Source of the DNA: Botryllus schlosseri
Lineage: Eukaryota
Direction: 5' to 3'
DNA length: 64,000 bases
NCBI GenBank assembly: GCA_051294905.1
Contig: CM119380.1
Coordinates: 5,766,001 to 5,830,000, forward strand
Shown: positions 4,422 to 64,000 of the stretch, one piece after another
Position numbering within the stretch: the stretch's first letter is position 1
How the letters are laid out: every line of letters starts with the position of its first letter
Position numbers and translations under genes: made by a program
The notes under the pieces: model-generated
Databases searched by the model: none
What the model saw: the letters and a program-made list of their open reading frames with translations, nothing else
Told to the model about the DNA's origin: nothing

Positions 4422-5122
4422 CAGTGGTTTTCAAAATACGCACCAGCACCCTCCTGGGGGCGTTCGCGAGTGCAAAGAGGGCGCGGTCCCTGCAATGGGC
4501 GATTGGGGGCGATAGCTATGAAATTGGACCGAAAGACGAATTTGATGGAGAAGCATAAATCAATCATTTCGGAAAACTGCACAAGTATATGGTGATTTGA
4601 TTCAAGGATATATTACAATTGGAAATTCCTTACCGGATAATCAATCCATTATGTAAAGTTTTCGAGTATGAAATGAGGTGCTGGTTACATTATAGAAGAA
4701 TTTTGAGTTCAAACGACACTTTATTATCTCTAACGAATCGTTCTGGATACACAATTTAATCAAATAGAAATACTCTCAATGGAGACGGGTAGACTTTTAA
4801 ATCATTGCCTTCCCCCTCATATTTGATGGAACGTGTTTTCGATGCGGTGACAAAGTTTCTGAATCACAGCAGAAATAGAGTCGACAGTACGGAACGTGGA
4901 AACTGGAGATTTCAAAATGACATTTTTTTTATCCAAGCTTAAACCTAATATGACCAAGATTACGATAATAATACACCAACGTCATCCGTTTCCATAATAG
5001 CTATATTAATTGCTGAACAAGTATCGTTATATTATTTAGACGTGGAGACAGGGTGTCGAGAAGCACTGGCCCTTTATTAGCTGTCCAGGGCGCGGTAGCA
5101 CAAAAAAGGTGGGGAAGCACTG
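4422..5122 (+). mobile_element. hAT-Charlie/Buster deletion derivative with decayed transposase C-terminus
   Basis: CAGTGGTTTTC...GAAGCACTG ends; flanks GATTACAG/GTTTATAG (6/8). Remnant peptides FKDILQLEIPYRIINP and IIAFP/SYLMERVFDAVT...RNRVD...KPNM...HQRHP (frameshifted) fit the hAT dimerization region. Confidence 0.7.
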
Positions 5123-5269
5123 GTTTATAGCAACAGTTATGGCTGATCGTAATTGAGTATTGTCGGTGACACGCGGTGTTTTTAGTCAGTGACGCTTCGG
5201 CGGGTATTTCTGGATAGGATAGGATGACCTTTATATATTTTTTTTAATCATCCACCTAGCAATGTGGGG

Positions 5270-5434
5270 AGAAAAACGGTATTTTGAGCTCTGAGCGAAA
5301 AGATGACCTTTTTTTTTAGTCAACCGATCACAAAGTGGGAAAAATTCACCGGTTTTTGAGAACTCTTCTCCTCGCAAGTCTCAAATTTCTGAAAAAGTGT
5401 CCTCTTTTTAGATTTCCAAAATATGGTGAGCCTA
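5270..5434. mobile_element. Partial copy of the MITE family at 52597-52946
   Basis: Shares gagctctgagcgaaaagatgacc...gatttccaaaatatggtRagccta with 52790-52946. Confidence 0.6.
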
Positions 5435-5651
5435 GTATAGTGGCAGTATCGAGATCTCTACAATCTCTATAGCAGTGGTTCTCAACCTTTTTTTATACAC
5501 GCCCCCCTTTTTGATAGTGAAAAATTGCGCGCCCCCCTAATCGTCATATCACAAAATCCAACTGGGATGCTAGCAACCGCAACAGATTGTTCGGTGGTAT
5601 GGCCGGTTATAAATATTGATAGAGAATAAAAAAAATATGAAATTGGGTCTA

Positions 5652-5932
5652 TATACGGCTTGAAACCGGAAGTTCGTGATCTTGCTTCTGATTGGTCAGA
5701 ATTTGTTGTCCTTGTTGATGACTGACAGCGTCGTCGTGAAGTGTCTGCCGACTGCGCCAGTCCATAAGGAATGTAAACAAACATATTGGAACAGTATTTT
5801 GCAACCGTTTCAAAGTTGCAGGCCTTGTCAGGATGAGTCTGTTTGGTTATAACCTAAGATGTAACATTCTATCGGCTGCAGTAACATCACCCCAGCAGGA
5901 GAAATGCCATAATTTTCAAGAATTTCCATAGT
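5652..5932 (+). repeat. Left terminal inverted repeat of the ISL2EU element
   Basis: Reverse complement of 9671-9951, ~90% identical. Confidence 0.9.
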
Positions 5933-6011
5933 CATTTTTAATTCTAAATGTTCTCTTTGTCGTAAATGGGTATATTATTGGTAAGACATTTATAGTTTGT
6001 TGTTATCCACT

Positions 6012-7229
6012 ATGGTCCATTGTGCGGTGTTTGGATGTGCAGCTACACAAAAAACAAATCCTGATCGATCTTTCCACCAATTTCCAAGTGATGAAAAGCT
6101 TAAAAAGACGTGGATAAACAGAATTAGCAGGAAAGATTGGTCGCCCAGTACTGGCTCCGGAGTGTGCTCTTATCACTTCAGAACAGAAGATTACAGCCGT
6201 AAGAGGGTGTCAGATGTGCCAGTTGGGTTCCAGAAAAAAAGGTTAAGAATGGATGCCGTGCCGAGCTGCAATCTTCGAGGCGAGAAAGAGGATACACGGA
6301 ATAACAAACGTAAAACGTGTACAGCTCAGCGTGCTAGTGACACCACTTTGGATGCAGATAAAAATTGTCATAATTCATCTAGCTCAGTATCCACCAACTC
6401 TTCTGATTGCTCTGTAAATGGCAGCACAAAAGCCATGTCATCGTCTTCAGAACAATGTTGCAGTAGCTCAGATACTCACCCCCAAGGAGGAGAGCTTGAA
6501 AAGCTGAGAGGTGAAGTAGCTGTTGCTCGTAGTGTAATTGCTGCTCTTGTTGATAAGACCAGAAACCAAGAGCAACAAATTGCTCAGCTCGAGAGTGACA
6601 ATGAAGCTAAACTTCTTTCTATGCTTGGACAATCTTCACAGATATTCATAGCGGCAAATATGACTGATGCTGAACTTCACAATTTCACCGGACTGAATAG
6701 AGAGATATTTGATATTATTGTGCTGGAGATTGACCGATTTCAGCCATTGAATTATTGGACTGGCAAAAGTGCACATTCTGTGAACACTTCTGAACAGCTG
6801 CTGATACTCCTCATGAAATTGAAATTCGACCTACCGAATGTGTTTTTAGCCAAGCAGTTCAATCTAAGTCATACGTCAATCAACAATATATTTTTAACCT
6901 ACTTGCACGCCATGCATGAAATATTCTTCAAGCAATTTTTGAACCAAGTTCCATCGGTTGCGAAGCATTTGTGCTCTACTCCACAAAAGTTCCAAGATAT
7001 TCCAAATTGCCGCATGATCATAGATTGCACAGAATTCTTTATAGAGACTCCAAGACAAGATCTTGAAGCAGCTTGTTCAAGTTTTAGCAACTACAAAAAG
7101 CGACTGACAGCTAAATACCTTATTGGAGTAGCTCCGAATGGAGCAATAACATACATCAGTGATGGATACCCTGGCAGTACCAGTGATAAAATGATTACCA
7201 AGCTGTCAGGGGTTTTACAGCATTTTCAG
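6012..7229 (+). CDS. ISL2EU/Harbinger-like transposase exon 1 (THAP zinc finger, HTH, first part of DDE_Tnp_4-type domain)
   Basis: MVHCAVFGC...W...VCSYHF...DAVPS = THAP (C2CH); EQLLILLMKLK...LAKQF = HTH; IIDCTEFFIETP and YKKRLTAKYLIG = catalytic region; exon ends CAG|GTCTGT in phase 0. Confidence 0.9.
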
Positions 7230-7451
7230 GTCTGTATCAGCATTAGAATCAGTCGTATCATGCTTGTAATGACATGAGTAACAATTTTTCTAGTGAATAG
7301 ACTTTCGTCATTGTTTTCATTGACTCGACTTGGACCAAGTATTATAGATCAAGAAATTAGACATGACCCGATCGAAGTCCCATGGTGTGATAGCACTTCT
7401 TGTGACTTTGATACTTACAACCCTGGATTATATTATACTTCTTTATAACAG
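7230..7451 (+). other. 222-nt GT-AG intron in the transposase
   Basis: GT at 7230, pyrimidine-rich tract and ACAG at 7448-7451; splicing gives QHFQ|AGDLVLADKGF and restores the second catalytic Asp motif. Confidence 0.85.
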
Positions 7452-7787
7452 GCTGGGGATTTAGTTCTGGCAGACAAAGGATTTCTTATTCATGAATTGA
7501 TGCCAAGTGGAGTGTCCTTGAATCTTCCACCATTTCTAGCTGGAAAAAAGCAATTTACTGAGACTGAGGCGAGGTTCTGCAAAAAGATAGCAAGTTGTCG
7601 AATACACGTGGAGAGAGCAATAGAAAGAATCCGTAATTACAAAATTTTAGCTACAATCACTAGTAAGAAGAGACCATTTGTCGATCAGCTAGTACAATTA
7701 TGTGGAGCTTTAGTAAATTTTCAGTCTCCAACTATTGATGGCGTATTTGATCGATACCTAAAATCGAATGAGCCAGCGCAGGTATAG
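7452..7787 (+). CDS. Transposase exon 2 (second D and E of the DDE triad); spliced protein 517 aa
   Basis: AGDLVLADKGF...IASCRIHVERAIERIRNYKIL; in frame with exon 1; TAG at 7785-7787. Confidence 0.9.
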   Translation, partial: AGDLVLADKGFLIHELMPSGVSLNLPPFLAGKKQFTETEARFCKKIASCRIHVERAIERIRNYKILATITSKKRPFVDQLVQLCGALVNFQSPTIDGVFDRYLKSNEPAQV

Positions 7788-8070
7788 ATTTTTTTAATTC
7801 AAAATAATCATAGTGCTTGGATTTGGAAAGGATTGAGACACTGCAGTTTTTCTTTCTTGAATGCGTTGTCATTATTCTACCGTAGGCCTATATGCTACTT
7901 CGAAGTTTGTTGTTACCATTGTTACAGTGTGAACTTCATGATGTGTAATTTTGTTGTTACATACTTTACTTTTTGAATATGTTTGAATCCCTTCAATGTG
8001 CCGATTACTCTTGATAAGAAGCACCCAAAATATATTATACGTATTCCTGCAATGGATGTTTATATAAAAC

Positions 8071-9354
8071 TTATTTTGCAGTAACATGAGGCAGAAACGA
8101 ATTCAAATAAAAATCAGTCAACTTAGGGAAGTTGGTTTCGCCCCAACAATTGTCCTTTGCCACCTTTATGATGTGGATATCTTTTGTGGTCCATAATACA
8201 AAATGACCCCATGACGTCTTGGCTGCTTCCATTCCGGCCTGGATTTGATGCCAATATTCATGGTTGATTTTCAATGAACCACATTGATCCAAATATGGAG
8301 AAGTATCTCTTCCACGTTTCTCAAACATTATATCATTAAAAGTTTTATTGCGGTGAATCCATGGACACTTGATTTCTAATAGCCGTCTTTCGCCACTAGA
8401 AGTGCTTATACCTCCATCTGGGCTGCACCCAAGATAACCACAAGGGAATAGAAGCAATCCAACCTTCATAATAGAGTTGCCGGTGTAGTTTTCATATGCT
8501 TTTATCGCAACATCCTCATGCATCTGACCCCACATTATTGCACTTTTGCAAGATAAATTATATTCACCACAAAGCGTTTTGAATATGGACTCGGGGTAGA
8601 CACCAGAGCAACCATGTCTGTCGAAAGCTTTTATCACCCGTCCAAAGTTGCTTCCAGTCAGTCTGTAACTGCGCATTCGACCCCATAATTGTGATCGAGA
8701 TTGTAGCTTTGTCTTTTCAGCAACGACGGTAATTTGATCCGGGTCTACACGGCACTTATTCAAAAATTCATTCTTGTCAGTTTTGAATAGTGCGAAGAGA
8801 TCAGATACATTTTCTGTTATGCTGATAAATGAAGATACACGTGATGGTGGCTCCGGACCTGTAATCCATTTTATTGGGCACGTAGTGTCAGCTTTCATTA
8901 TATGTGTTTGGAAGGATTTTCTATCTTCAACGTCAAACTTTCTTGGCAAGGCACTGTAACATTTTTTGGATGAAGGAAATAACTCTTTCATCGGCTGTAC
9001 GTTTTCTTTACATGCCCTTCTTGGGTGTGTAATCCACGAATTCGGCAGATCGGTTTTAGACATTCCATTTTTGTTAACATAGATCGCAACTGTGGCCATG
9101 TGGCTGCAAATCCATTTGCCCCGCGGGCATTCACACGTTGCACTTCTGATGCCCCCAGTTCCGTCTAAATTGATGGTGACTTTGTAAACACAGTCTTTCC
9201 AAGATGCTCTGATCTTTGCAATAATCTGAAAGTCTTCTATTTTCAAAGAGATAACATGATTGGATTTGATTTTCAACTCTGCTTTTCCAATTACAGCCAG
9301 GTCTTCAGAAAAGAATGATAACGCTCCTGCTAGGGTGACTACCTCTGAATCCAT
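8071..9354 (-). CDS. SWIM zinc finger + YqaJ/lambda-exonuclease-like (PD-(D/E)xK) protein, 427 aa
   Basis: SWIM ATCECPRG...CSHMAT; YqaJ motifs W..R..RLTGS, WGQMHE, LGCSPDG, LLEIKCP, YWHQIQ; uninterrupted ORF with true ATG. Confidence 0.9.
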   Translation of the reverse strand: MDSEVVTLAGALSFFSEDLAVIGKAELKIKSNHVISLKIEDFQIIAKIRASWKDCVYKVTINLDGTGGIRSATCECPRGKWICSHMATVAIYVNKNGMSKTDLPNSWITHPRRACKENVQPMKELFPSSKKCYSALPRKFDVEDRKSFQTHIMKADTTCPIKWITGPEPPSRVSSFISITENVSDLFALFKTDKNEFLNKCRVDPDQITVVAEKTKLQSRSQLWGRMRSYRLTGSNFGRVIKAFDRHGCSGVYPESIFKTLCGEYNLSCKSAIMWGQMHEDVAIKAYENYTGNSIMKVGLLLFPCGYLGCSPDGGISTSSGERRLLEIKCPWIHRNKTFNDIMFEKRGRDTSPYLDQCGSLKINHEYWHQIQAGMEAAKTSWGHFVLWTTKDIHIIKVAKDNCWGETNFPKLTDFYLNSFLPHVTAK

Positions 9355-9670
9355 GAATTACGAATAGCTTCCAATATTACTGCAATCGAAATAATATTAT
9401 ACTGTATATTAGGTAATATCACGACGAATAACCTAACAAATTCATCCTTACAATGCCTGGAGTTTTCTCACGGTTCTACAGTACTCTTCTTTTTGCTGAC
9501 AATTACCCCTGAAGAGTGAATAACTAAAATATTCAGGTATATTTCAATAAGAATATACCATTAAATTGTGAATTGAAGTTCTGTACCTCCAAGAGCTACA
9601 TAGTGGATAACAACAAATTATAAGTGTCTTATCAATAATATCACTATTTACGATAAAGGTAACATTCATA

Positions 9671-9951
9671 ACTATGGAAATTCCTGAAAATTATGGTATT
9701 TCTAGTGCTGGGGTGACGTTACTGCAACCGATAGAATGTTATATCTCAGGTTATAACCAAACAGACTCATCCTGACAAGGCCTAGAACTTTGAAACGGTT
9801 GCAAAACACTGTTCCAGTGTTTTTGTCTACACTCCCTTTGGACTAGCGCAGTCAGCATGCCCTTGACGACGACGCTGTCAGTCATCACCAAGAACAACAA
9901 ATTCTGACCAATCAGAAGCAAGCTCACGAACTTCCGGTTTCAAGCCGTATA
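9671..9951 (-). repeat. Right terminal inverted repeat of the ISL2EU element
   Basis: Reverse complement of 5652-5932. Confidence 0.9.
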
Positions 9952-11159
9952 GAGAGAAACACGCGTGCATTGGAGGTAAATCGCGCGGAGCGCCAAAAAT
10001 TATTTCAAGTGACCGCTTTTTCGCGCCCCCTTTAGATGTTTCACGCCCCCCAGGTTGAGAACCCCTGCTCTATAGTGATGGCAGACATACAGTATGTCGG
10101 CCAACCTGAGCCTGCGACAGGCTGTAAAAATGACGTCAAATTGACTTTCTCCTGTCTTTCGCTAAACAATCATCATATTTTCGTAATAACTGTTCGATTG
10201 GCACGAGACACGAGTATAGTAGTATATACCATCGCGACAAACTCACATTTGCAAGTTACTGTAGCGCAAATTTTTACCCCTTCAAGGGTTATTAAAGTGT
10301 GGACCGCAAATGGTATAATTTTGGGTCGGCACCCTGCCAGAGCTATATGTTAATATTTATGTAATATTTATTGAAATTATTGCAAAAAATCCTGTGATCG
10401 TTTTCACATATCCAAGGTCACTGTAGGGTACTGTCGCCAATAAGCGAGACACGCATTAAATGTGGCTTTATCATGAGAATTCATGATAAGATTTGTCCGA
10501 CACTGTTTTTATTTCTGGAAAACATGGTCGAAGACCGTTGGGATGAACGAGTTTAGGGGTGTGCGACGAGCGAGTTCAGGCCTATGAGACTCATTCATTT
10601 CGAGGCCAACCCCTTCTGCGTCGGGGCACATAAATACGTAAAGTTTTGGCGAACAAACCGCTGATGAAATGCGGTGCAAAAAACAAAAGCATCGACAAAA
10701 CCTTGCTCTAAAAATGACTGATGCTGGATGGCCAAACCTTTCGAGATGGATTGGATATGCTCCGTTGTCGGCACGGAATAGTCCCGTTCTTGCAATCTGA
10801 GTAGACAGTAGTACAACTGCGATACGCAGAGGAATTTAATTCACCCTAATTTGAAATCGCGTGCGTCAGAGATGTTTTGTAGAGCTGTGTTGGGTAAAAT
10901 TGTGGTGTTCGGGTTCTGTATGTCATTCATGCCCGTAAAATCGTAGCATACAACTGTAATAATAAAAATATATTCCGTTTCATGGGTGAGGCTCGGGTCG
11001 CGATGGATACCACAAAAACTCAGATTTTGGTGTTATACTCAAAAAGCAGCTTTGCCGTTATTATACTGTCCTGCATTCTCAAGTTAGATTGAGCTAAAGA
11101 GTAGAACACACAGTACCGTGAGTTATTTGCTCTTTTCACAAACTTGCGAGACAGAAGTT

Positions 11160-26616: not shown

Positions 26617-27215
26617 AGTTACCATAAGAATATTTATTCTGGTCACTATGAAAAGTTATAAAAAGTGACAGAAATAACGCTAATAAGATGTGAATTAAGT
26701 TCGGCAGATTGCTAAGTTATAAATCATCCGTAACTTATCTTCAAAAGAGCCATGTATGGTTTGTGGACAATAGGTCCTCGACGCCTACCGAAAATGGTCA
26801 CGAACACAGTCAGATAGTCACGTAATCATAATTGCTGAAGTCATTTACTCAGCCGCGACACATCTTAACCATGGCAGTGTTAGGATGAGACGGGTCACGG
26901 TATTCGTGTGACTTGACTTGACTCGAGTCAATTTGCAAGATGACTTGCCTTGACTTGACTTTGACTCGACGCTTCAGAAATGCAGATTGACTCGTAACTC
27001 GCAGATAAATATACGGGAGAATTTCAAATTTTCAAGTATTCGATGCCGACTATATCGTTGTATCTTGTATAAGTTCGGATTGGTAACCAATCATTGAATT
27101 ATAAGTTTTACCGAGCCTCCATTGTTATATCACAATGAAGGGATCGCAAACGCAGTGATGGGGGCTTGCAGCTTACGTTGTCGTAAACTTGCTTCCCGTA
27201 ATCAACCCTCTAGTA

Positions 27216-28583
27216 CAGTGGTTCTCAACCTTTTTTGACACGCGCCCCCCTTGAAGATGGTCAAAAAAATCGCGCCCCCGTGACGCCCTTTGCATTTATC
27301 GTCATGTCAAAAAGAGCACATCATCTAATACAGAGGTGGGCAACGTTTTTGATAATCATGGCCGCATTTCGATTGCTTATGTAGCGTAAGGCCGCATTCC
27401 AGGGCATAGCCGCAATGAACGATCTGGACGCAAAATACCTATGGTAAACTGTCCATATCCATTCCCGGTGAACTCCGGACTTCTACTTTTCACAATGGCC
27501 TATTGTACGCACCGAAATCGCGAGTGGCAATGTTATGAATAGTTGCCGGGAGGTGCATATTGTCGCGCGGAGCGCGAAAATTTTTCAGGGCCGCAAACGA
27601 ATTGTTATTTCTTGCCAATTTCCATTTCGGCTCAGATTAAGAAGGGCGCTACTGCATTAAAATCGAAAAATGAAGTCTTGTTGAATTGCGCAGAGGGCGA
27701 AGAAAATTTTAAGATTAATTAAAATCTCTCGAAAATGCGAGAGTGAATTCGTAATTGCAATTTGCATGTCTACGGCCGCCAACACATACTAATTGAATGA
27801 GGCGTCGACGGCCGCTCCAATTCCCTTCTACGGCCGCAGGCTGCCCACCCCTGATCTAATAGTATACATAAGGTCTATCTTACGCCAATTTTGAATCTGC
27901 ATTCCAGTTGTTGAGTCTTTTACATTGCTGGCAAATTTCTCCAAACTTGTTTGAAAATTACAAAAAAACATTGAACAAGACATCCATTAATTAATATCAA
28001 GGTAGGTCACCCTGAGACTAATCCTGATGCTGGTAGTGAGTACAGAGAGCAAGGCGTCGTTCTGTCCTGCCAGGCTAAATTTGATCAGTTTTGGAAATTA
28101 ATGAAATTGTGTTGATTTATAGCCTAATTGAGGGCGAAACCGGGCAACCTATGTTGCATCTAAGTCTGTCTTAGGCAGTGCAGTTCGCAAGCTACTAACA
28201 AGAGCTGCCCGGCGCGACAAGCTTTAGGCTACTGTCAAAGCTATGAAGCAATGAATGACTTACACGTGGGAATTGCTCTAAATCTTCAAAGAATTTCAAA
28301 AATTTGCTCAAATGAAGTTGAAATCAGACTATACTCCGTTGAGCGCGGTTGCTAGAGTTTGTATTTGCAAACTTTCTTGAATATGGAATAAATTTCATCT
28401 TCATTAATCGTCTTCTCATAATGGATGTGAAACACATGTTCAGACACGGACAATTTATACCGACTTTGTCAATTTCTCGCACCCCCCCCCCCCCCCTATA
28501 CTGACTTCGTCCATTTTTCGCGCCCCCCATGAGAGCTTCCCGCGCCCCCAAGGGGGGCGCGCCCATCAGGTTGAGAACCCCTG
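27216..28583. mobile_element. hAT MITE related to 5473-10067
   Basis: TIRs CAGTGGTTCTCAACC / GGTTGAGAACCCCTG; perfect TSD CTCTAGTA. Confidence 0.9.
27331..27853. mobile_element. hAT MITE nested in 27216-28583
   Basis: CAGAGGTGGGCA / TGCCCACCCCTG ends; perfect TSD ATCTAATA. Confidence 0.9.
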
Positions 28584-29283
28584 CTCTAGTATCATTTGAA
28601 TCTAAAGAATATAGTTTATACGTTTATAATTGTTTATCGTGGATATATAGGTGGGCAGGGTATTGCACCATATCAATTTTTAGAATTTCTGAGGTTTCGC
28701 ATGTTATCCTGATTTAGGCTGATAATTACAGACTCAGGCTATACCGCTATACATGTGTACAGTTTAGCTCTTCTACGTATGCGCGAACGATACAGTGCCT
28801 TTTTGCGTGTATAATCAACTTCTTATGCGTTTCTCGATTCAGAACAAATGCGGAGTCCATCTGAATTTAAAACAGTTAGCAAAATACAATGACTTTGAAT
28901 CATGACTCAAACTTTGAAACTTCAACTTGACTTGACTAGTGACTTGACTTGTGACTTGAATTGACATTACTCGATTTGACTCGAGTAACCTCCAAAAATC
29001 CAGTGACTTGACTTGACTCGAATTAAAATGAGCAATGACTAGAGTTGACTTGATCCTAACTAACACTGAATCATGGCTGCGCGACTACACTAATGATCAA
29101 GAGAAAATACAGGTTTCTGATTAGTCAAACTCATACCGTTGACAAGAGTTATACTTGGCAATTTTATTATGTCGTTTTGGACCGGTATCACGAGTTAGCA
29201 ATCAGGCACTCCCACGAAGTACTTGTCACGATCTCGTTGCCTCCCAAGTTGTAATCGTTTATTAATTCACGTTTATTTGTCAG

Positions 29284-29849
29284 GTGACGAGACTGTCGAG
29301 GTATGCGCTGGAAATCGATGGCGCTTCAGTTCAGGAATGAGATTTCCCAGATATGATTTTGCAACCTGTGTGGTCGGAAGTAAAATATTAGTCGCGGGCG
29401 GTGTTTTAGATGCAGCTGGCGATTCCTATGTCCGCGAAATAGAGATTTACGACACTCTGAGCAGTAATTGGACAATGGCAAGCGGGATGACATTGTCTCG
29501 GAGAGCGTTTGTACTGGTTCATGTGAATGACAGGATATATGCAGTAGGGGGAGATGACGAGCGTACCGTGGTTTGGAACAATTCAAGTGCAGGCCAAAAC
29601 TGGTCCGATTCCGTAGCCAATACGCCGAGATTGTCGTCGTATGACAGCGTGGCTCTGAATGAAGCGATTTATGTCGTTGGAAAGACGGAGGATATCAGAA
29701 GTTTTCAAAAGCACTGTCTGGCGGATAATCAATGGCGTGACCTACAACTTCCCTCCATTCCTTGGCGTGGCGGAGTACGAATGGCTATCGTCCCTAATCG
29801 GCAGCGCGAAAATGCAGAAAATGCGAAGCGTCTCCGATCTGCAAGTTGA
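29284..29849 (+). CDS. Terminal coding exon of a kelch-repeat protein (probably a BTB-BACK-kelch family member)
   Basis: Acceptor tttatttgtcag at 29283 (phase 1); open frame with kelch blades PRYDFATCVVGSKILVAGG, EIYDTLSSNW, RIYAVGG, AIYVVG...NQW; TGA at 29847-29849. Upstream exons not securely located. Confidence 0.8.
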
Positions 29850-40322: not shown

Positions 40323-40662
40323 TTAGCAGATAGACAACAGCTATAGCATATATTACCGGAGATTTTAAATACCATTACAATATTGTATTTTACAAGCCCG
40401 TATCGCAGTTCTGGTGGAAGTCGTTTTCAACCAGCATTAATCGCTATAATCCGTGTTGCATACTCAAGTGCCACTTGGTTGGTACCATGCATTTAACGAT
40501 ACTTTCAAGGGTACAGAGCTTTAATTTACATTTTCATAATATATTCTTCGCGTAATATATTAAAACCCGAAGAATTTCGAGCTGACACTCATCACGGAAA
40601 ATCGTCAGCCAATACTGAATTTCAGAAATCTGCGTCGACCTACATTGCATATAACGATTTAT

Positions 40663-44483: not shown

Positions 44484-46559
44484 TAAGCTCCAACCAGTGT
44501 TATAAAAATCAAAGTGAAGTTATTTACTTGCACGCAGTTTTTTTGAGTTAAGAAATCAATATTATTATCCATCAACTATTAATATTGACAAAATTAATTT
44601 GTTGAAGCATGTTGTCATTACGTGATCTCGGGCAATGATTGTCGGTCCTCGGATGATATTGAAATCGCTCACCCATACCAAATGAAACTAGAGAAAACAT
44701 TCCCATTTCTATTCGCATTTGGTCTACGGCTCTCATTCGTGCCTCACGGCGCTTTTATTAGAACTTCAGTGATTGAATCAATATCGAAGCTTCCGATGGT
44801 TTTGGGTCACGGCTTTATCGCCAGTGATCTATTTGGCAGCGCACTTCTCATGAAGTCGCATTGGACAAACCAATGGCCGTATGCGGCCCGTGGGGCGCGG
44901 GTTTGAGACCCCTGCGGTAGACTATGCACAACAAAATTTTAAATATGCATAGTGACACTAAAGAGCGCGACTCAGATTTGAAATAGCTCCGCAACGAAAT
45001 ACTATATACTTTATGTTCATTATCAATATAATTTCGGGCCACCATCGAGTTTGGTTCAGAAATTAAGTTGTGTGGAATGCTCAATGTGCCCGAAATTTGT
45101 TTTTTCCGGGATCGTTTGAATGCTATTACAATGTGCCTCGCGGTTCCCAAAAATTGTTTCGCGAACACATAAAGGACCTATAGTTTGCGGACCACTGAGC
45201 GAAATGCTTGTGAATGTAAGAGTTCATAGCCACGGCCTGCAAGAAATCGGCGTATACTAGTCACACTTGCATTTCCCTCTGAATTTAATGATTGCGATCT
45301 AATACCACGCGGAACATGTTGTTTAATGCCATTAGTTATGAAGCAGCCCGCTGGTGAATGAACACTGCATCAGATGGCCCCGCTGGAGAACGCTAGCGGT
45401 CAGAACCTGCCAGTTGGTGATCCCCACGATCGTTCGTGCACTAACACTACAATGTAAAAAAATAACCTCGATTTACCTCGAGATGTCTGGAAGCAGGGTG
45501 GCCAGCCACTTGTCAGTAATATAACATTACCGTCACTCAATGCAAATTTAACTTACACCCGTCCGGTATTCTAACTGTACACGCCAGACTGTAATGTCAC
45601 AGTCGACTCCGGAATATCCAATCTACATGTTCTACTGTACAGTGTGTATTTACGACCGAGACAGTAATTTTACCGCCCATCTACATGCCGCCCCAGTCAA
45701 CAAAAGCGTGGATATTCAATGCCGAACCAGGCGAAGTTGGTGAAGGAGGGAAGGGATCACAGCCGTTTCCTTACTATACTATGATTTACTAAAACGGATC
45801 GCTCTCGAACTCAAAAGATCGATTATTCTTCTTTCCATCGACGGCCGGGTAGATTGGTGTCAACGTTATTAACCAATCAAATTGCGATGATTATCACGCG
45901 GCATCATCGTGACGTTCCTTCTGCATAGCTTCGCCAGGTTTGTGACCACTTGAGCGTGGAGTAATTGTAATGTCTAGGGCAATTTTTTTTTGACCTAAAA
46001 AAACGGAAGATTTTGACCTAAAAAATCTAAATTTTGACTTTTTTTGACCTAAAAAAAATTGAAATTTGACCAAATTTTGACCTTACGTATGCAAATTAGG
46101 TGTTTCCGCACATAATGTCAAAATTGTACTACTTATCTTCATTTCTGGTTGGAACTGTCTGTCCTTGGAAAGTAGATCGGCCTGAAAAAACGTTTTGGGC
46201 ACAAAAACTAGCAAATTTTTACATGAAAAAACTATCGAATAGTATATTCATATTGAAATGAACCGGAATATTTTCGGCTGACACTCGTCAGGGGTAATCG
46301 TCAGCAACTAGTAGAGAATTGGAAAGAACATGGTATATCAACAATCGTATCTCAAACTATGACGTCATTTGTGTGACTTGAAGTCGACTTTTATCAAAAT
46401 ACACCAACCAAAACTCTGTCAACAAAAGGAGTTCGTGTACCACCTAAAAATAGCACATTGAACGCTCTCTCTTTCATGTTGGTGACGTCATATTTTGTGA
46501 TACGATTGTTGATATACCATGTTCTTTCCAATTCTCTACTAGTTGCTGACGATTACCCC

Positions 46560-50664: not shown

Positions 50665-50992
50665 TGCGGGGATGAAGAGCGGTCTGTCAGTCTGCGATTG
50701 TATACGGGAAGTCCGTGGTCTACGGATAGCAGCTAATAGTATATACTTAACTGGCAGTAGCTGACACGAACGTCCTGTGTAGTTCTTGACTGTAGTTCAA
50801 TAGACACCAACAATTGCCTTTTCCAGATATATTGTACGGACGGTATATCAATTCGGGTACAAACAGTAGGTTAGCGTACATGAGTCTCTGAGTCAACTTG
50901 GATATGCACTGGGTTATAACTATGCGATAAGTCACGTGATGTAGTATTATACCATAACAGATATATGAGAGAGAAGGAGCCAGGGCTCCACA
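50665..50992 (-). repeat. 5' LTR
   Basis: Direct repeat of 46560-46887. Confidence 0.95.
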
Positions 50993-51944
50993 CCCCTGAC
51001 GAGTGTCAGCCGAAAATATACGGGTTCATTTCAATATGAATATACTATTCAATTGTATATTGAAGTTCTGTACCTCCAAGAAGCCCATGAAAAAAGTAGT
51101 ATTTTAACGAAATCTGGCCCTATGAAGAATTCCAGTAGCTACATTACGTATTATGGTGGAAATAATTTAAATTTGTTGTAGTACAACGAACGAAAGATAG
51201 CTTACTTTCCTACATTCTCGGGTAGAAAGTGTTTGTCCTTACTAAGTAGCTTTCCAAGAATGGAGAAAGAACGTTAAACAGCAGCGGTTGTTGGCTGAGA
51301 ACACTGAAGTTGTGTGCACACTGCTGGTGACACACCGTGTTGCTTCATTCTGACAATGTTGTCTATATCACAATTTTTCAGCTTGCGCTTCTTGATATAA
51401 GAATCATGCAATGTCCAAGCAGTCTTGCTTCAGTTAGGATATTGCGGTACGTTGACCATTAAACCATGTCACTATTTGTTTCATTTGATCGTTTATGATT
51501 CACAATGAGCAGACGATGGGTCATTTACAACAGTAGGCCTATAAAGTAGGCTACAAGCTGTAAAATATCAAGTGATAAATTCACCGACAGCGCAAAATCT
51601 ACGATACAAACAAAATTCAGAGGTCAAAAAATGTTTGACTTTGTAAACAATTTTGACAAATTTTGACCTAACGCTACAATTTTGACCTAATTTGGACTTT
51701 TTTTGACATGTCAAAAAAAAATTGCCCTAGTAATGTCATATTCATGTTGTTTACGGCTGCACACTTGAGTTTGAATTATATTTCCCCCGTACCGGCGAAG
51801 TGTATTTACGAGATTATATATAGCGATGGAATCGAATATGAATGAGGTCCTTCGTTGAGATAAGTTGAGTAATAGATAGTTCGGGCTATGATGAAATTTT
51901 ATACGTGCTTGCTTAGATGTCTACTGATATAGTCTGCTTGTTTG

Positions 51945-53837: not shown

Positions 53838-55319
53838 ATGGAGGGCATACAACATACGAGGGCAAAGCGTAAACCGACCGATCCTATATCATCGGATAGT
53901 GACGAGCCTAGTGATGGCGTTAGTGACCGGCTTCAACCGAGTGGGAGCAAAATCCCCGCTCGAAAGTATGCAGTAGCGGATGAGAATTCTGTATCACAAA
54001 CTAGCACTACTAATGTTAATGCAAATATTGTTTGTTCTCCCACGTCCGAGAGTGTCTCCCGACCTCCTGCAAACACAGTTTCTCCGCCAGCGGCACAAAC
54101 CAGCATTGTTCCCGATAACAACGAAAATAACATAGATAGGAAAGTGGTGATTTCAGGACAACAAAGGTCTATTCTGCGCTATCACCCAACAGTGGTGAAC
54201 AGGGCGTTGTCCGCGTTGATCACCAATTATCAAGACATCAAACCTCTTCACAAATCCGGTTCTTTGCTCATCACCTGTCACAATCACAAGCAGGTTACGC
54301 AGTTGTTGTCATGCGGTAGTCTAAGCGACCCAGTGACGCATACCGATATCCCAATCGAAACGTCGAAATTTACACCGAGGCCGTTCGCCAGCAGAGCTGT
54401 AATTACGGGTGTTCCACTAGACGTAACGGACGCCGAGTTATTGGACAGCTTCGCCACCTATCATGTAACTTACGCCAAGCGACTCAAGAAGAGAAGGCCA
54501 GAATACGGAGTCTCCGACAGTCTCTCGGTGTTACTTTGTTTTAGTACCAGGGAAGTGCCAGAATTCATTTCATTCGGATATCTTCGCTTTAGGACAAAAC
54601 ATTATAATCCACCCCCAACTAGGTGCTTTAAATGTAACCGCTTCGGTCACACCGCGAATTCGTGCCGCGGTAAACTTACTTGCGCGAAATGCAGCAGTCG
54701 TGATCACGAATACAAGGATTGCCCTAACTTGAAAAAATGCGTTAATTGTAACCAACCGCATAGCGCAGGGTATGGAGGATGCCCCATCTACAAAGAGGAA
54801 GCTAAAATTCAAATTGTTAAAGAACGCACAAACGTGTCTTTCACAGAGGCGAAGGAAATCGTACGATCTCGAACCTCTGAAACCTCTCAGACCACCTCTG
54901 CTAAGACACTGTATTCCGAAGTGCATCATCGTCGTAAAACTACAGCCCGGTCTTCAACAAACAATAAGAAACCAAGTTGTTATACTTCACCCGCCCCAAA
55001 CGACGGCGACCTTAGATATCTGTCAAACTCAACTGTCGTACCCAGCCAAATTAGTGAAGATCGACAGAAACAAACCACATCCATGTCCAGCTTGAATATC
55101 AACCCAATACAGCTATTGGCGCTTGTTGCGGAGGTTGTACAGCTAACGGTATCAGCATACAAAACTGGAAACAGCAACATCTTCGACATCGTGGCTAAGG
55201 CATCGAGTAAATACTTCGGCTACTCTGTCGAATCCGATCTATTGCAGCAAGCATCAAACACATCAGATCCCTCCGTCGATAAATCTTCTCCGGTCTCGCA
55301 AGGCAGCAAAGTTCAATAG
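53838..55319 (+). CDS. LINE ORF1 (Gag-like nucleic-acid-binding protein), 493 aa
   Basis: Three CCHC knuckles (RCFKCNRFGHTANSC, TCAKCSSRDHEYKDC, KCVNCNQPHSAGYGGC); intact. Confidence 0.92.
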   Translation: MEGIQHTRAKRKPTDPISSDSDEPSDGVSDRLQPSGSKIPARKYAVADENSVSQTSTTNVNANIVCSPTSESVSRPPANTVSPPAAQTSIVPDNNENNIDRKVVISGQQRSILRYHPTVVNRALSALITNYQDIKPLHKSGSLLITCHNHKQVTQLLSCGSLSDPVTHTDIPIETSKFTPRPFASRAVITGVPLDVTDAELLDSFATYHVTYAKRLKKRRPEYGVSDSLSVLLCFSTREVPEFISFGYLRFRTKHYNPPPTRCFKCNRFGHTANSCRGKLTCAKCSSRDHEYKDCPNLKKCVNCNQPHSAGYGGCPIYKEEAKIQIVKERTNVSFTEAKEIVRSRTSETSQTTSAKTLYSEVHHRRKTTARSSTNNKKPSCYTSPAPNDGDLRYLSNSTVVPSQISEDRQKQTTSMSSLNINPIQLLALVAEVVQLTVSAYKTGNSNIFDIVAKASSKYFGYSVESDLLQQASNTSDPSVDKSSPVSQGSKVQ

Positions 55320-55320
55320 A

Positions 55321-58300
55321 ACACTATCTATTCTCCAATGGAACTGTCGCGGCATATATAGAAAATTGAACGAGTTCAAACAATTTGTATCCACCCTAAC
55401 CATTAAACCGGATGTTATACTCATTCAAGAGACGCACCTCGTTGCGAAATACTCCCCGAAGCTACGGGGCTACCATCTGTATCGACGAGATAAGACATTA
55501 CACTCCGGTGGCCTCGCCACATTTGTGCACGAGTCATTGTCATCCTCGATTGGCTATGGTTTTCAATCGGCGTGTTTTGAAATGTTATGCGTCAACGTTA
55601 GCGGAATAAACATTTGTAACGTTTATATGGCGCCCGACGTTGTTATCGGCAGCAACGATCTTGCATGCCTACGTCACTTTTCCTCTCGGTCACTCATTTG
55701 CGGCGATTTCAATGCCCACCACCTACAGTGGAGCCACTGCTCGAACGCCAGAGGCAAAGCGATCTACGATTCCCTCGACCAACACAACCTGGTTTTGCTG
55801 AACTCATCCCAGCCCACTCGTCTGAACATCTCCACAACGGCAGTAAACAGGTGGTCTCTTTTGGACTTGACCGTAGCCTCTGGTGATATTGCCGCGCGAT
55901 GCAACACTTCCGTTTCCGACACCCTCATAGGAAGCGATCATTTTGTTATCTTTACAACAATCAATGACAGAATAACTCGCTCCTCGCCTAGACCCCAGAA
56001 GTGGTTGCTTGGGAAAGCTGATTGGGAGAGGTTCTCAATATGTGTCGACGATTCGCTGGCGGGTGTACTCGAGGATGATGTGGAAACATTAAATTCCACT
56101 TTTGTCGACGCTTTAAATCGCGCAGCCACCGAAACCATTCCGCGCTCTAGATCCACAGACAAGATCCCAGTACCGTGGTGGACACCGGAATGCGCTCGCG
56201 CCATCCGCCGCAAAAGAGCAGCTTTCAAAATGATGAAACGTAGTTTTACCACTCGTGACGTCATAGAATATTAAAAACGCCGCTCCGAATGTCGCCGAAC
56301 TATATTGCGATCAAAACGCTTAAGTTGGGAACGTTTCTGCGATACCCTCAACAGTCATTCGGGAATGGCGAAGGTCTGGAAAACGATTGGTTCGATTTCG
56401 GGTAAATACAGCTCCATGTCTATACCATCTCTTATCTCGAATAACAGTAACGCCATCGGCGACTTGAGCAAGGCAAATATGCTGGCATCGACTTTCGTTT
56501 CCGTCAGCAGCTCCGAAAACTACGACCCTGACTTCCTGCTCACGAAAACCGATTTCGAAAAATCACACCCCATCAGCGACATGGTTAATGAAAATAATCT
56601 AAATAGTCCTCTCGATAGACCATTCACGCTACAAGAATTTAATGTTGCATTACGATCACGCAAAAGCACGGCACCCGGAGATGACTCCATCTGCTATGCA
56701 ATGATCAAACGTCTATCATCCGCTGCTGTTGTCAAGCTTCTTGCCCTTATAAATAGGTCTTGGGGAACAGGATGCGTTCCGGGGGCCTGGAAACACTCCA
56801 TCGTCATCCCAATCTTGAAAACAGGCAAGGAGTCAACTAGGCCGGAGTCCTATCGCCCCATCTCACTCACAAGTCACATCTGTAAAATTATGGAAACTAT
56901 GGTCACGAACAGATTACGATGGTACTTGGAATCCAAGAATCTGCTAAATAGATGTCAATCGGGTTTTCGCCATGGTCGCAGCACGCTCGACCATATTCTG
57001 AGAGTCCATGACACTGTTTATAAAGCGTTACATAATAAACGATCGGTGGCGGCAGTTTTTCTTGATATAGAACGAGCATACGACATGGTTTGGCGAACTG
57101 GCCTCATCCACAAGCTGTCACAAATGGGGGTTAAAGGAAACATGCTTAGGTGGATCTCAGAATTTCTAAAAAACAGAACCTTCCAAGTCCGCGTGGGTAG
57201 CTCGTTGTCGCGATATCACATTCTAGAAAATGGTTTACCCCAAGGTTGCGTTATTTCGCCATTACTCTTCTCCGTGATGATTAATGACCTTCCTACAGTT
57301 ATTCAGTGTGAGCATGCATTATTCGCGGACGATTGTGCTATATGGGAAAGTGGATTATCCGTGGAATCCAACATCTCTGCGGTCCAGTTAGCCCTAACAT
57401 CGATTCAACTGTGGTGTAAACAGTGGGGTTTCAAAATATCGCACACGAAATCGGTGGCGATGCTATTCACAAGAAAGCGATCACTGCCATCCGTGTCTCT
57501 ACGTATCGGCGGCACGCAACTCAGCTTTGTAGACAATTTTAAATATCTTGGGGTTGTTTTTGATAAATTGTTGTCATATAAATGCCATATAGAGTATCTC
57601 GAGAAGAAATGTAGCAACAGATTGAACGCTTTGCGTCGTCTGACTGGAACCTCGTGGGGCGCTGGCAAGAGTTCGCTACTGATAATCTATAGGACAATGA
57701 TACGATCACTTACCGATTATGGAATGCCAGCATACTTCTTCGCCCCGAAATCCCTCCTGGTGAAGGTGGAGAAAATCCAAAACAAGGCACTTCGAATTAT
57801 CTGCGGAGCTATGCATAGTACACCGATTTGCGCATTGCAAGCATCCTGTTGCGAAATGCCTCCGCACATTCGCCATAGATACCTAAGCCTAAACTACCGA
57901 TGTCTTCTGCTTAGTCATCCAGCGAGCAGCCACTCATCTCGGCACATTATCGAAGACTCGTGGCATGAAATATATCGTGTTATAAATCCGAGATTCAATA
58001 CTTTTAACACGCTAACGAAGGCAGCTTGTTTTGAAAACATGGTGATCGAGCGATTCGATTCCCCTTCCCCTCCGTGGGAGTTATCGATTCCATGCGTTGA
58101 TATCGACCTATCTAGGTTAGTCTCGAAACAGGACGTACCCCAGTACATCCAATGTAGATGTCTCGACTTTATCTTTGAAAGATTTGGCGAACACGTCCAT
58201 ATATTTACTGATGGTTCAAAGACTGAATATGGTGCTGGACTTGGGGTATACGTCCCAGAATATTCGTATTGCTATAATCGGGCTTGCCCGACTCTATCTT

Positions 58301-59052
58301 CCTCATTCTCAGCCGAATTGAAAGCTATAGTCTTCGCATTGATGTGGATACTACAACACAGCAGCTCCACGAATCGACGCTATGTAATCTTTTCCGACTG
58401 CCTGGCGGCCCTGAGGGCGTTGTCATACCCGCATACCCGTAAGCCGCATAAGGAAATATATCTCTCATTTGATATTCTTTCACAGATAAAGACCACGGGT
58501 GGCATGGTAACATTTGCCTGGATACCAGGTCACGCCGGAATAGAGGGCAACGAGAAGGCTGACCAACTAGCTCGGGCTGCATCAAGTCAATCGCGGGAAC
58601 CCGGTATCGATATCCCAACCGTAACATTATCAGAGGCGAAAGTGGTCACCCGAAAGCTCTGCAGAGACCAATGGCAGGCCGAGTTCACTGCAGAGGAGAG
58701 AGGGCACCACTACCGGATGTTGCGACCATCTATAGCAACTGAGGCGCCAGATTCCTGCCGAAATCGCCTATTTGAAAGAATCCTGTTTCGTCTCCAAACC
58801 GGTCACTGTCGCCTGGCGGCTCACCTATTCAAAATAGGTTGCGCCGACTCCCCCCTTTGTAATGTGTGTTACGTCCCCGACACGGTTGACCACATACTCT
58901 TGCATTGCGAAAAATATGACTTTCACCGAACATTTCTTGCCTACGCTTGTACCACGCTCAATGTACCGCTTACGTTAACCAATCTACTTACTATGCCGCA
59001 ATTATTTACGCCGGTCGGCGAGTTTATTATTGCATGTAACTTGTATATATAG
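55321..59052 (+). pseudogene. LINE ORF2 (AP endonuclease, RT, RNase H, CCHC) with one in-frame TAA at 56272-56274
   Basis: SILQWNCRG, LIQET, GDFNAH, SDH (APE); YRPISL, QSGFR, FLDIERAYD, GLPQG, LFADD, KYLG (RT); FTDGSK, AELKAI, FSDC, WIPGHAGIEGNEKAD (RNase H); CNVC...HILLHC. The two track ORFs 55366 and 56305 are in the same frame. Confidence 0.93.
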
Positions 59053-59239
59053 TTTGAAAGTTTGTATAGTTTGAAAGTTTATATAGTTTGAAACTTATTA
59101 TAAGCCCATGTCCCAGAGCACCAAAACTCGATCCTTGATAACATATTTTGTCCGTGGTGCACAAGGCCGGAAACGGCGACACGCGCCACTTAAAACTCAT
59201 CATTAATAATAATAATAATAATAATAACCCGTGGAAAGT

Positions 59240-63709: not shown

Positions 63710-63917
63710 CTGCAGTTACACTAACAAGAAATCATACGTAAGTCGCTATATTAGGCTAAGTTGTTCCTAACCTTGACATGACATTATAAAGACTAAGACA
63801 AATAGGCTAACAAAAATATAATAAGTTTTGAAGTACCGGTTCATCTGGTACATTGTGTGATGACGGCTCCTCATTTTACATGATATAGCAGAGATTCATG
63901 ACTGAATTTATCTAATG

Positions 63918-64000
63918 CAGTGGTTCCCAACCTTTTTGTCTTCATTCCCCACTTCAGATTCATTCCGAACCATCATTCACCACCAGGACCGTAACAGCAC
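63918..64000. mobile_element. Left end of a further hAT MITE
   Basis: CAGTGGTTCCCAACCTTTT; runs off the window. Confidence 0.7.

What the first reader, a model, noticed from the sequence alone, without database searches (positions are those of the whole stretch)
5652..9951. Intact two-gene transposon pairing a THAP-DDE transposase with a SWIM-YqaJ exonuclease
Seen: both ORFs are uninterrupted (517 aa after one intron; 427 aa), converge tail-to-tail 283 bp apart, and sit inside 281-bp TIRs; the element split a MITE whose TSD is still perfect, so it is probably recent. Known: ISL2EU elements of the PHIS superfamily encode a YqaJ/lambda-exonuclease-like protein in place of the Myb/SANT partner of Harbinger. 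To my knowledge the role of this nuclease in transposition has not been established. Inference: this copy may be a mobilisable unit in which a viral-type 5'-3' exonuclease resects ends to steer donor-gap repair or insertion, making it the best experimental candidate in the window.
Basis: partly seen in the sequence, partly recalled or inferred. Interest (0 to 1): 0.72.

Follow-up and report, generated by a model that had tools for sequence, protein, structure and literature searches.

The report
Intact ISL2EU transposon with nuclease partner
This is a complete, coding-intact copy of an already described kind of animal DNA transposon (ISL2EU), which carries a THAP-DDE transposase and a lambda-exonuclease-like partner gene whose role in transposition is still unknown; it is a good specimen, not a new kind of element.

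Summary
A 4.3-kb element at about 5655-9948 has long terminal inverted repeats. It encodes a 517-aa THAP + HTH + DDE_Tnp_4 transposase (one phase-0 intron) and a convergent 427-aa SWIM + YqaJ protein, 283 bp apart. It sits inside a high-copy MITE.

All catalytic and zinc-binding residues are present in both proteins. The partner's C-terminal half models as a lambda-exonuclease fold.

The two-gene design is the published definition of ISL2EU (Han 2014, 2015). All six relatives with enough flanking DNA show the same convergent pair. So this is a new family-level member of a known kind; the best protein identity to anything in the database is 57%.

"Recent" and "mobilisable" are not shown. No public run holds this exact copy; other copies are about 97% identical, and some carry frameshifts or internal deletions. 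No RNA evidence was obtained. The nuclease's role remains inference.

Small additions:
- The TIRs are longer than reported (about 350-360 nt) and run to the transposase ATG on both arms.
- They carry ETS-like and CCAAT-box-like motifs conserved across distant families, which suggests twin inward promoters.
- Variants between copies in transposase exon 1 give dN/dS of about 0.3.

The same scan noted two other ISL2EU-like elements elsewhere in this genome.

The parts
5465..5652 (.). Left half of the host MITE that the element interrupts (terminus TAGCAGTGGTTCTCAACC...)
   Evidence: Inverted termini 5465-5488 / 10052-10075 (I4). Word depth is 10^3-10^5 against about 10^2 for the element, and joined forms lack the element.
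5653..5654 (.). Left copy of the most parsimonious 2-bp target-site duplication (AT) inside a TATA target
   Evidence: Paralogous empty site GGGTCTA|TATAGAGAG (joint 5651->9948). Flanks of relatives L001 and L004. ISL2EU TSD reported as AT.
5655..6014 (+). Left terminal inverted repeat, 360 nt, ending at the transposase ATG; likely promoter and 5' UTR of the transposase gene
   Evidence: The outer 60 nt match the right arm at 58/60.
5664..5671 (+). AACCGGAA (ETS-like core) in the left TIR; invariant in all six aligned arms of three families, also in L004 but replaced in L005
5688..5695 (+). CTGATTGG (reverse CCAAT / NF-Y-like box) in the left TIR, conserved across six related families
6012..7229 (+). 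Transposase exon 1 (406 aa): THAP 4-86 (C4, C9, C52, H55), HTH_Tnp_4 256-303, first part of DDE_Tnp_4 with catalytic D338
7230..7451 (+). Phase-0 GT..AG intron of the transposase gene (222 nt)
   Evidence: Sequence. The junction fits the homologue without a gap. No RNA evidence.
7452..7787 (+). Transposase exon 2 (111 aa plus stop): rest of DDE_Tnp_4 with the second D (LADKGF, D414) and E (HVERAIE, E460)
7788..8070 (.). 283-bp spacer between the two convergent stop codons (3' UTRs)
8071..9354 (-). SWIM-YqaJ partner gene, 427 aa, single exon: SWIM C74/C76/C83/H85; conserved SKTDLPNSW motif 99-107; lambda-exonuclease-like domain about 205-427 with E280, D313, E327, K329
9599..9948 (-). Right terminal inverted repeat, 350 nt. 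It carries the same motifs (AACCGGAA 9932-9939, CTGATTGG 9908-9915) and a copy of the transposase leader ending in ATG followed by TAG. Likely promoter of the partner gene.
9949..9950 (.). Right copy of the 2-bp TSD (AT)
   Evidence: As for 5653-5654
9951..10075 (.). Right half of the interrupted MITE

Best explanation
This is an autonomous ISL2EU (PHIS superfamily) cut-and-paste DNA transposon in an animal genome, probably a cnidarian. It inserted at a TATA site inside a high-copy MITE.

Two inward-facing genes are each preceded by one arm of a roughly 350-nt TIR, which probably acts as promoter and leader for both. One gene encodes the THAP-HTH-DDE transposase, which binds the ends and does the cutting and joining. 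The other encodes a SWIM zinc-finger protein fused to a catalytically intact lambda-exonuclease/YqaJ domain.

Most likely mechanism (inferred, not shown): the partner is brought to transposition intermediates through its SWIM/N-terminal module. There it digests 5' strands at the double-strand breaks made by excision. That would channel donor-gap repair toward homology-directed or single-strand-annealing repair, so the element is restored at the donor site and its copy number rises.

My odds:
- It is an ISL2EU autonomous-type element: about 0.95.
- This copy is coding-competent: about 0.8.
- This copy is currently mobile: about 0.3.
- The nuclease acts by 5' resection of breaks to steer repair: about 0.35-0.4.
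For: Domains and gene models.

Catalytic and zinc residues present and invariant across homologues: D338/D414/E460 and C4/C9/C52/H55 in the transposase; E280/D313/E327/K329 and C74/C76/C83/H85 in the partner.

Fold: AF2 model with pLDDT 84. Top Foldseek hits are lambda exonuclease (E 8e-9) and LHK-Exo. The profile hits 3syy at 1.9e-14 and 1avq at 1.7e-6.

Architecture: 6 of 6 relatives with enough flank have the same convergent pair.

Selection: across families, synonymous sites of the partner are saturated (pS about 0.8) while pN is 0.28-0.37, which indicates long-term purifying selection. Among variants between copies in transposase exon 1, 13 are synonymous and 15 non-synonymous, giving dN/dS of about 0.31 (binomial p = 0.0026).

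Multi-copy family with frameshifted and internally deleted derivatives.

Literature defines ISL2EU by exactly these features.

The sister group Spy transposes with its transposase alone and has no partner gene (PMC4122938, PMC11304231). This argues that the DDE enzyme does not need a second nuclease for strand cleavage, and it favours a post-cleavage role for YqaJ.
Against: - There is no transcript evidence. The one raw RNA run gave zero reads, and a contig from a run only guessed to be RNA runs unspliced through the intron.
- No public run holds this exact copy (best word share 0.55). It carries private substitutions, several of them non-synonymous.
- The two TIR arms are only about 87% alike, against 96-99% in three relatives (L001, L002, L004).
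- Some copies lack a 169-bp stretch upstream of the partner gene (9419-9587) that overlaps a dispersed repeat. Promoter integrity is therefore uncertain.
- Nothing here bears directly on what the nuclease does in transposition.
- The three partner-gene variants that were displayed are all non-synonymous, but that is far too few to judge.
Confidence: 0.6

Rival explanations
1. TnsA-like role. The PD-(D/E)xK partner is part of the cleavage machinery itself. It cuts the 5' strands at the transposon ends while the DDE transposase cuts the 3' strands, as TnsA and TnsB do in Tn7. The partner would then be essential for excision rather than for repair.
For: The partner's PD-(D/E)xK catalytic residues are invariant. 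The partner gene is kept in every relative examined. The same fold includes endonucleolytic members such as Cas4, SOX and mimivirus R354 among the structural hits. The Tn7 precedent is established knowledge.
Against: The closest folds are processive exonucleases (lambda Exo, LHK-Exo), not restriction-like endonucleases. Spy, the sister clade with a related DDE transposase, is active with the transposase alone (PMC11304231).
Confidence: 0.15
2. Adaptor role. The partner works like Harbinger's Myb-like protein. Through the SWIM finger and the conserved SKTDLPNSW motif it binds the transposase and/or subterminal DNA and helps nuclear import or assembly of the transposition complex. Nuclease activity would be secondary or dispensable.
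For: It occupies the same position in the element as Harbinger's second ORF. The N-terminal SWIM module and the linker motif are as conserved as the active site.
Against: The transposase already has its own THAP and HTH DNA-binding domains. The nuclease active-site residues are invariant over more than 50% protein divergence, which argues that catalysis is selected.
Confidence: 0.15
3. Dead copy. Both ORFs are open, but this particular copy is immobile or silent, for example through diverged TIR arms, private amino-acid changes, a disrupted partner promoter, or host silencing. It would then be a good template for sequence analysis and nothing more.
For: The TIR arms are about 87% alike against 96-99% in three relatives (L001, L002, L004). 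At least 6 private non-synonymous changes lie in exon 1. Depth over the right arm 9642-9808 is low in all runs, so that arm is atypical for the family. No RNA reads were found.
Against: The outer 60 nt of both arms match at 58/60, and the conserved motifs are intact in both. All catalytic residues are intact. Open reading frames of 517 and 427 aa would not survive long neutral decay.
Confidence: 0.45
4. Domesticated gene pair. The locus is a host-retained, orthologous pair under host-level purifying selection rather than an active transposon.
For: dN/dS of about 0.3 against roughly 97%-identical sequences that assemble as long single unitigs in two other samples.
Against: Both TIRs are kept with identical tips. 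The element sits inside a MITE. One deep run shows many sequence variants, including frameshifts and internal deletions, which means several copies. Two further ISL2EU-like elements were noted elsewhere in the same genome.
Confidence: 0.05

Closest known systems
ISL2EU transposons (PHIS superfamily; Repbase ISL2EU; Han et al. 2014, PMC4122938, and 2015, PMC4482050)
   Same: THAP + HTH + DDE_Tnp_4 transposase. A second ORF with a YqaJ exonuclease domain. Animal host. Insertion into an AT-rich target with a 2-bp (AT) duplication. About 4-5 kb long, with long TIRs.
   Different: - The TIR tips read (T)ACGG/ACGC rather than the usual GG.
- The target looks like T|AT|A (TATA) rather than A|AT|T.
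- The TIRs (350-360 nt) exceed the 6-259 bp range reported.
- The proteins are at most 57% (partner) and 52% (transposase exon 1) identical to anything in the protein collection searched.
- The partner's SWIM finger is not mentioned in the papers read.
PIF/Harbinger transposons
   Same: Related DDE_Tnp_4 transposase with an HTH. Two-gene design in which both products are thought to be needed.
   Different: Harbinger's partner is a Myb/SANT DNA-binding protein, not a nuclease. Its TSD is 3 bp (TWA). Its transposase has no THAP domain.
Spy transposons (sister group of ISL2EU)
   Same: Closely related DDE transposase. AT-rich palindromic target.
   Different: Single ORF, no THAP, no YqaJ partner, no TSD. 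Spy has been shown active with the transposase alone (PMC11304231).
Lambda exonuclease / YqaJ / LHK-Exo phage recombination nucleases (PDB 1avq, 3sm4, 3syy)
   Same: Fold and PD-(D/E)xK active site of the partner's C-terminal half (Foldseek E 8e-9; profile E 1.9e-14).
   Different: The phage enzymes are about 200-230 aa, stand alone and pair with an annealase (Red-beta, RecT). Here the domain is fused to an N-terminal SWIM finger and a linker of about 100 aa, and no annealase gene is present in the element.
Tn7 TnsA/TnsB
   Same: A DDE transposase working with a PD-(D/E)xK-fold nuclease encoded by the same element.
   Different: TnsA is a restriction-endonuclease-like end cutter. There is no sequence or close structural match here, and the analogy is only conceptual.

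Membership tests
ISL2EU (PHIS superfamily) | Transposase with a DDE_Tnp_4 (IS5/Harbinger-type) catalytic domain and an intact DDE triad | tested here: met
   PF13359 at 1.4e-19 (exon 1) and 6.4e-17 (exon 2). D338, D414 and E460 fall on invariant columns.
ISL2EU (PHIS superfamily) | N-terminal THAP zinc finger (plus HTH) on the transposase | tested here: met
   PF05485 at 1.1e-15, residues 4-86. C4, C9, C52 and H55 are invariant. HTH_Tnp_4 at 1.1e-06.
ISL2EU (PHIS superfamily) | Second ORF encoding a YqaJ-type exonuclease | tested here: met
   PF09588 at 3.9e-14. Lambda-exonuclease fold. The same pair is found in 6/6 relatives.
ISL2EU (PHIS superfamily) | 2-bp target-site duplication, typically AT | tested here: inconclusive
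   The insertion adds 4296 bp to a TATATA site. AT plus A...T termini fits here and is the most parsimonious reading in relatives L001 and L002. Because the TATA target is palindromic, a 4-bp TSD or no TSD cannot be formally excluded.
ISL2EU (PHIS superfamily) | TIRs usually starting with GG | tested here: not met
   The tips read ACGG (this element) or ACGC (relatives), so GG or GC comes only at positions 3-4. The paper says 'usually', so this is a clade peculiarity, not an exclusion.
ISL2EU (PHIS superfamily) | Transposase groups with ISL2EU rather than with Harbinger, Spy, Pangu or Nuwa in a phylogeny | not tested
   No reference set (Repbase) was available. The assignment rests on domain architecture and on the partner gene.
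Lambda exonuclease / YqaJ nuclease family (for the partner's C-terminal domain) | PD-(D/E)xK core with the acidic and lysine residues in place, and the lambda-Exo fold | tested here: met
   E280, D313, E327 and K329 are invariant in 35 sequences. HMM alignment to 3syy and 1avq. Foldseek target-normalised TM-score 0.6-0.7.
Lambda exonuclease / YqaJ nuclease family (for the partner's C-terminal domain) | 5'->3' exonuclease activity on double-stranded ends; toroidal oligomer | not testable with these tools
   This needs biochemistry. Only a monomer model was made.
SWIM zinc finger | CxCxnCxH signature in a beta-beta-alpha unit | tested here: met
   PF04434 at 8.4e-07, above the cut-off. C74-x-C76-x6-C83-x-H85 is conserved at 90% or more. 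The model has strands 56-63 and 69-74 followed by helix 84-95.
Active (currently mobile) transposon copy | Near-identical sister copies, insertion polymorphism, and transcripts | tested here: inconclusive
   Other copies are about 97% identical and none is exact. The empty sites seen are probably paralogous MITE copies. There was no RNA coverage.

The most novel reading that the evidence does not exclude
The long TIRs are twin inward-facing promoters. Each arm carries the same leader (up to and including the transposase ATG) and conserved ETS-like (AACCGGAA) and CCAAT/NF-Y-like (CTGATTGGYYA) boxes within about 45 nt of the tip, shared by families whose proteins are only 45-57% identical. The element would thereby co-express the transposase and a SWIM-tethered lambda-type exonuclease in a fixed ratio from host housekeeping-type promoter modules. 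This clade, possibly this copy, would still be mobile, giving a tractable system for finding out what a recombination exonuclease does for a eukaryotic cut-and-paste transposon.
Probability: 0.25. Interest if true: 0.55.

Novelty: new member of a known kind. Interest (0 to 1): 0.33.

Why it matters
ISL2EU is the only eukaryotic cut-and-paste group that regularly carries a phage-type recombination exonuclease, and nobody has shown what that enzyme does. A copy with both genes open, all catalytic residues present and well-defined ends is a usable starting point for asking whether a transposon can steer the repair of the break it leaves behind.

Twelve potentially active ISL2EU families were already listed in 2015. 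This copy therefore adds a specimen and a few details: the SWIM module, the conserved linker motif, and promoter-like TIR motifs. It does not add a new principle.

Tried and rejected
- **RNA evidence.** The one raw RNA-seq run laid (X21, a differently labelled organism) gave zero reads, so it is no test. A contig from X7, a run only guessed to be RNA, runs unspliced through the intron, so it is DNA or pre-mRNA.
- **Allelic empty site.** Joints that skip the element exist. However, the flanks are a MITE present in thousands of copies and the joint sides are only 21-24 nt long, so these are most simply paralogous empty MITEs, not proof of polymorphism.
- **Dating by TIR divergence.** Rejected. 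The arms of a DNA transposon are not reset to identity at insertion. Roughly 13% neutral decay would also be incompatible with two open ORFs.
Rejected. It is a TA dinucleotide.
This does not fit the best-supported empty site, nor relative L001.
- **Scans of metagenome contigs for the TIR tip.** The 25-mer gave nothing. The 19-mer gave 12 hits, none of which extends beyond the 19 nt, so they are chance matches.
- **Earlier-findings search by sequence.** Blank.
- **Host identification.** Not achieved. Run names are coded, and the best named relatives are from the jellyfish Rhopilema esculentum at 44-50% identity.
- **The large representative protein search.** Not used, because no claim here rests on absence of relatives.
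- **The joined 517-aa spliced protein.** The exons were searched separately, so no whole-protein search or fold of the transposase was made.
- **dN/dS on the partner gene within the family.** Only 3 variants were displayed (all non-synonymous), which is too few. Cross-family comparison was used instead.


Full report
**What is there**

The stretch holds two long open reading frames: 5997..7277 on the plus strand and 8071..9354 on the minus strand. Only eight ORFs of 170 aa or more exist in the whole 64-kb window, and the other large ones belong to a LINE-like retroelement.

Inverted repeats of 288 nt at 90% bracket the two ORFs (5648-5935 and 9668-9955). Gapped alignment extends them to 360 and 350 nt at about 87%. 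The 26-nt tip TACGGCTTGAAACCGGAAGTTCGTGA occurs exactly twice in the window, once per strand, where none is expected by chance.

**Gene models**

The transposase starts at ATG 6012.
- Exon 1 (6012-7229, 406 aa) carries THAP (1.1e-15), HTH_Tnp_4 (1.1e-06) and profile positions 1-69 of DDE_Tnp_4.
- A GT..AG intron spans 7230-7451.
- Exon 2 (7452-7784, 111 aa) carries DDE_Tnp_4 positions 75-158.

The junction is exact. Exon 1 aligns to residues 5-368 and exon 2 to residues 369-471 of a full-length Rhopilema esculentum homologue.

The zinc ligands C4, C9, C52 and H55 and the catalytic D338, D414 (LADKGF) and E460 (HVERAIE) fall on invariant columns of the homologue alignments.

The partner gene (9354..8074, 427 aa, single exon) has a SWIM finger (8.4e-07) and a YqaJ domain (3.9e-14). 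The two stop codons lie 283 bp apart.

**The partner protein**

The word search found 65 relatives. Most are 430-440 aa long and 43-57% identical. In a 35-sequence alignment several features stand out:
- The SWIM signature C74-x-C76-x6-C83-x-H85 is conserved.
- A linker motif SKTDLPNSW (99-107) is nearly invariant.
- E280, D313, E327 and K329 are invariant.

A profile of that alignment hits the Laribacter alkaline exonuclease 3syy (1.9e-14), lambda exonuclease (1.7e-6) and mimivirus R354.

An AlphaFold2 model (pLDDT 84) has an N-terminal beta-sheet-plus-helix SWIM module, a poorly ordered linker, and a C-terminal domain. The closest solved folds to that domain are lambda exonuclease (Foldseek E 8e-9) and LHK-Exo.

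Across families, synonymous sites of this gene are saturated (pS about 0.8) while pN is 0.28-0.37. The gene has therefore been under long-term purifying selection.

**Conservation of the architecture**

Six relatives had enough flanking DNA: a Rhopilema chromosome-scale contig, a 4.7-kb NCBI contig and four ENA contigs. All six have the same convergent arrangement, with SWIM-YqaJ facing a THAP/HTH/DDE_Tnp_4 gene. The partner is therefore not an accident of this copy.

**Ends and target**

The flanks are the two halves of a MITE with inverted termini (I4). In public runs its depth is 10 to 1000 times that of the element. Contigs from three runs join 5651 directly to 9948, giving GGGTCTA|TATAGAGAG. 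The insertion therefore added 4296 bp to a TATATA site.

That total can be read in three ways:
- a core CGG...CCG plus four letters (a 4-bp TATA duplication);
- ACGG...CCGT (5655-9948, 4294 bp) plus a 2-bp AT duplication, which is the published ISL2EU convention;
- TACGG...CCGTA with no duplication.

The target is palindromic, so this site alone cannot decide between them. In relatives L001 and L002 the 2-bp AT reading needs the fewest mutations.

Five families share the end TATACG[C/G] rather than the GG start usually reported.

**TIR content**

Both arms run inward to the sequence TTGTTGTTATCCACTATG. On the left this is the transposase start codon; on the right the ATG is followed at once by TAG. 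In relative L002 the 396-nt arms end 5 nt from the transposase ATG and 34 nt from the partner ATG.

In all six aligned arms of three families whose proteins are only about 45-50% identical, the blocks ACG, AACCGGAA and CTGATTGG are invariant. L004 also carries both boxes. L005 keeps only TGATTGG, and a CTGATTGG-containing terminus is also visible at L007.

AACCGGAA matches the ETS core, and CTGATTGGYYA matches the reversed CCAAT/NF-Y box; that resemblance is from my own knowledge. I infer that each arm acts as promoter and leader for the gene it faces, which would give coordinated expression. The same blocks could instead be transposase-binding sites. Neither reading is tested.

**Age and activity**

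The best public run holds only 55% of the stretch's sampled words. At several positions every laid contig in three runs differs from the window. No available run therefore contains this exact copy.

Two samples carry long unitigs about 97% identical to it. One deep sample shows many variants, including eight single-base deletions in or between the ORFs at 12-25% of depth, and internal deletions (6555-6966, 7314-7977). That is what a multi-copy family with decayed members looks like.

Of the 28 displayed variants in exon 1, 13 are synonymous and 15 are not. That gives dN/dS of about 0.31 (binomial p = 0.0026), and the non-synonymous changes concentrate in the linker. The list was truncated by the tool, so this is indicative only.

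Ten of those variants are private to the window copy, six of them non-synonymous. The arms of this copy are less alike (about 87%) than those of relatives L001, L002 and L004 (96-99%). The right arm at 9642-9808 has the lowest depth in all runs, so it is atypical for the family.

No RNA evidence was obtained. "Recent" and "mobilisable" therefore remain open; I put current mobility of this copy at about 0.3.

**Comparison with what is known**

Han et al. define ISL2EU by four features: a DDE/HTH/THAP transposase, a second ORF with a YqaJ exonuclease domain, a 2-bp AT duplication, and animal hosts. They list 25 families, 12 of them potentially active, and state that the function of the second ORF is unknown (PMC4482050; PMC4122938; PMC9179366). 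The finding is thus a correct identification of a known kind.

No paper among the 46 that mention ISL2EU reports a functional test of the nuclease, judging by titles and abstracts and by the passages read.

The sister group Spy lacks the partner and is active with its transposase alone (PMC11304231). I take this as indirect evidence that the nuclease acts after cleavage rather than in it.

**Mechanism**

*Shown:* the domains, the intact active sites, the fold, the conservation of the pair, and the insertion into a TATA site.

*Inferred:* the transposase excises and integrates the element, and the SWIM-tethered lambda-type exonuclease resects 5' strands at the resulting breaks. That would favour homology-directed or annealing repair that restores the donor copy (about 0.35-0.4).

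*Rivals:*
- a TnsA-like end-cutting role (about 0.15);
- an adaptor role like Harbinger's Myb-like protein (about 0.15);
- for this copy specifically, an immobile or silent state (about 0.45);
- host domestication, which is unlikely (about 0.05).

**Verdict**

It is a new family-level member of a known kind, and its interest is modest.

Noticed in passing
window 9495-9600 (also 50992-51081, 46238-46316, 40510-40559): A stretch of about 100 nt between the right TIR and the partner-gene start is about 80% similar to three other places in the window. Two of these flank the LTR element that another note describes. Its depth in public runs is about 4 times that of the rest of the element, and some copies appear to lack 9419-9587. 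It may be a small dispersed repeat sitting in the partner gene's upstream region.
   Followed up: partly
window 5465-5652 + 9951-10075; related pieces at 27208-27279 and 63911-63954; possible neighbouring copy at 5102-5493: A very high-copy MITE with termini TAGCAGTGGTTCTCAACC and a TA duplication. Its word depth in public runs reaches 10^4-10^5.
   Followed up: partly
window 53838-59052: A LINE-like retroelement. It has an unassigned 493-aa ORF, then an endonuclease (Exo_endo_phos_2, 8.4e-19), then a 915-aa ORF with reverse transcriptase (4.3e-39) and RNase H, in separate frames.
   Followed up: no
window 59231-59806: An ORF with a Pol_BBD domain (7.6e-17), which points to a fragment of an LTR-retroelement pol gene just after the LINE.
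   Followed up: no
window 29223-29849: An open exon with Kelch repeats (1.4e-15). This is probably a host gene.
   Followed up: no
L001:4712-8431, L002:56-3738, L004:3689-7457, L005:3882-7251: Related ISL2EU elements from a jellyfish and from ENA assemblies share the end TATACGC and a CTGATTGG box about 25-45 nt from each tip. Their TIR arms are 96-99% identical in L001, L002 and L004, much closer than in the window copy.
   Followed up: partly
window 8071-9354 (-), residues 99-107: The motif SKTDLPNSW, just after the SWIM finger, is nearly invariant in 35 homologues yet lies in a segment that models as disordered. It is a candidate short interaction motif, for example for the transposase.
   Followed up: no
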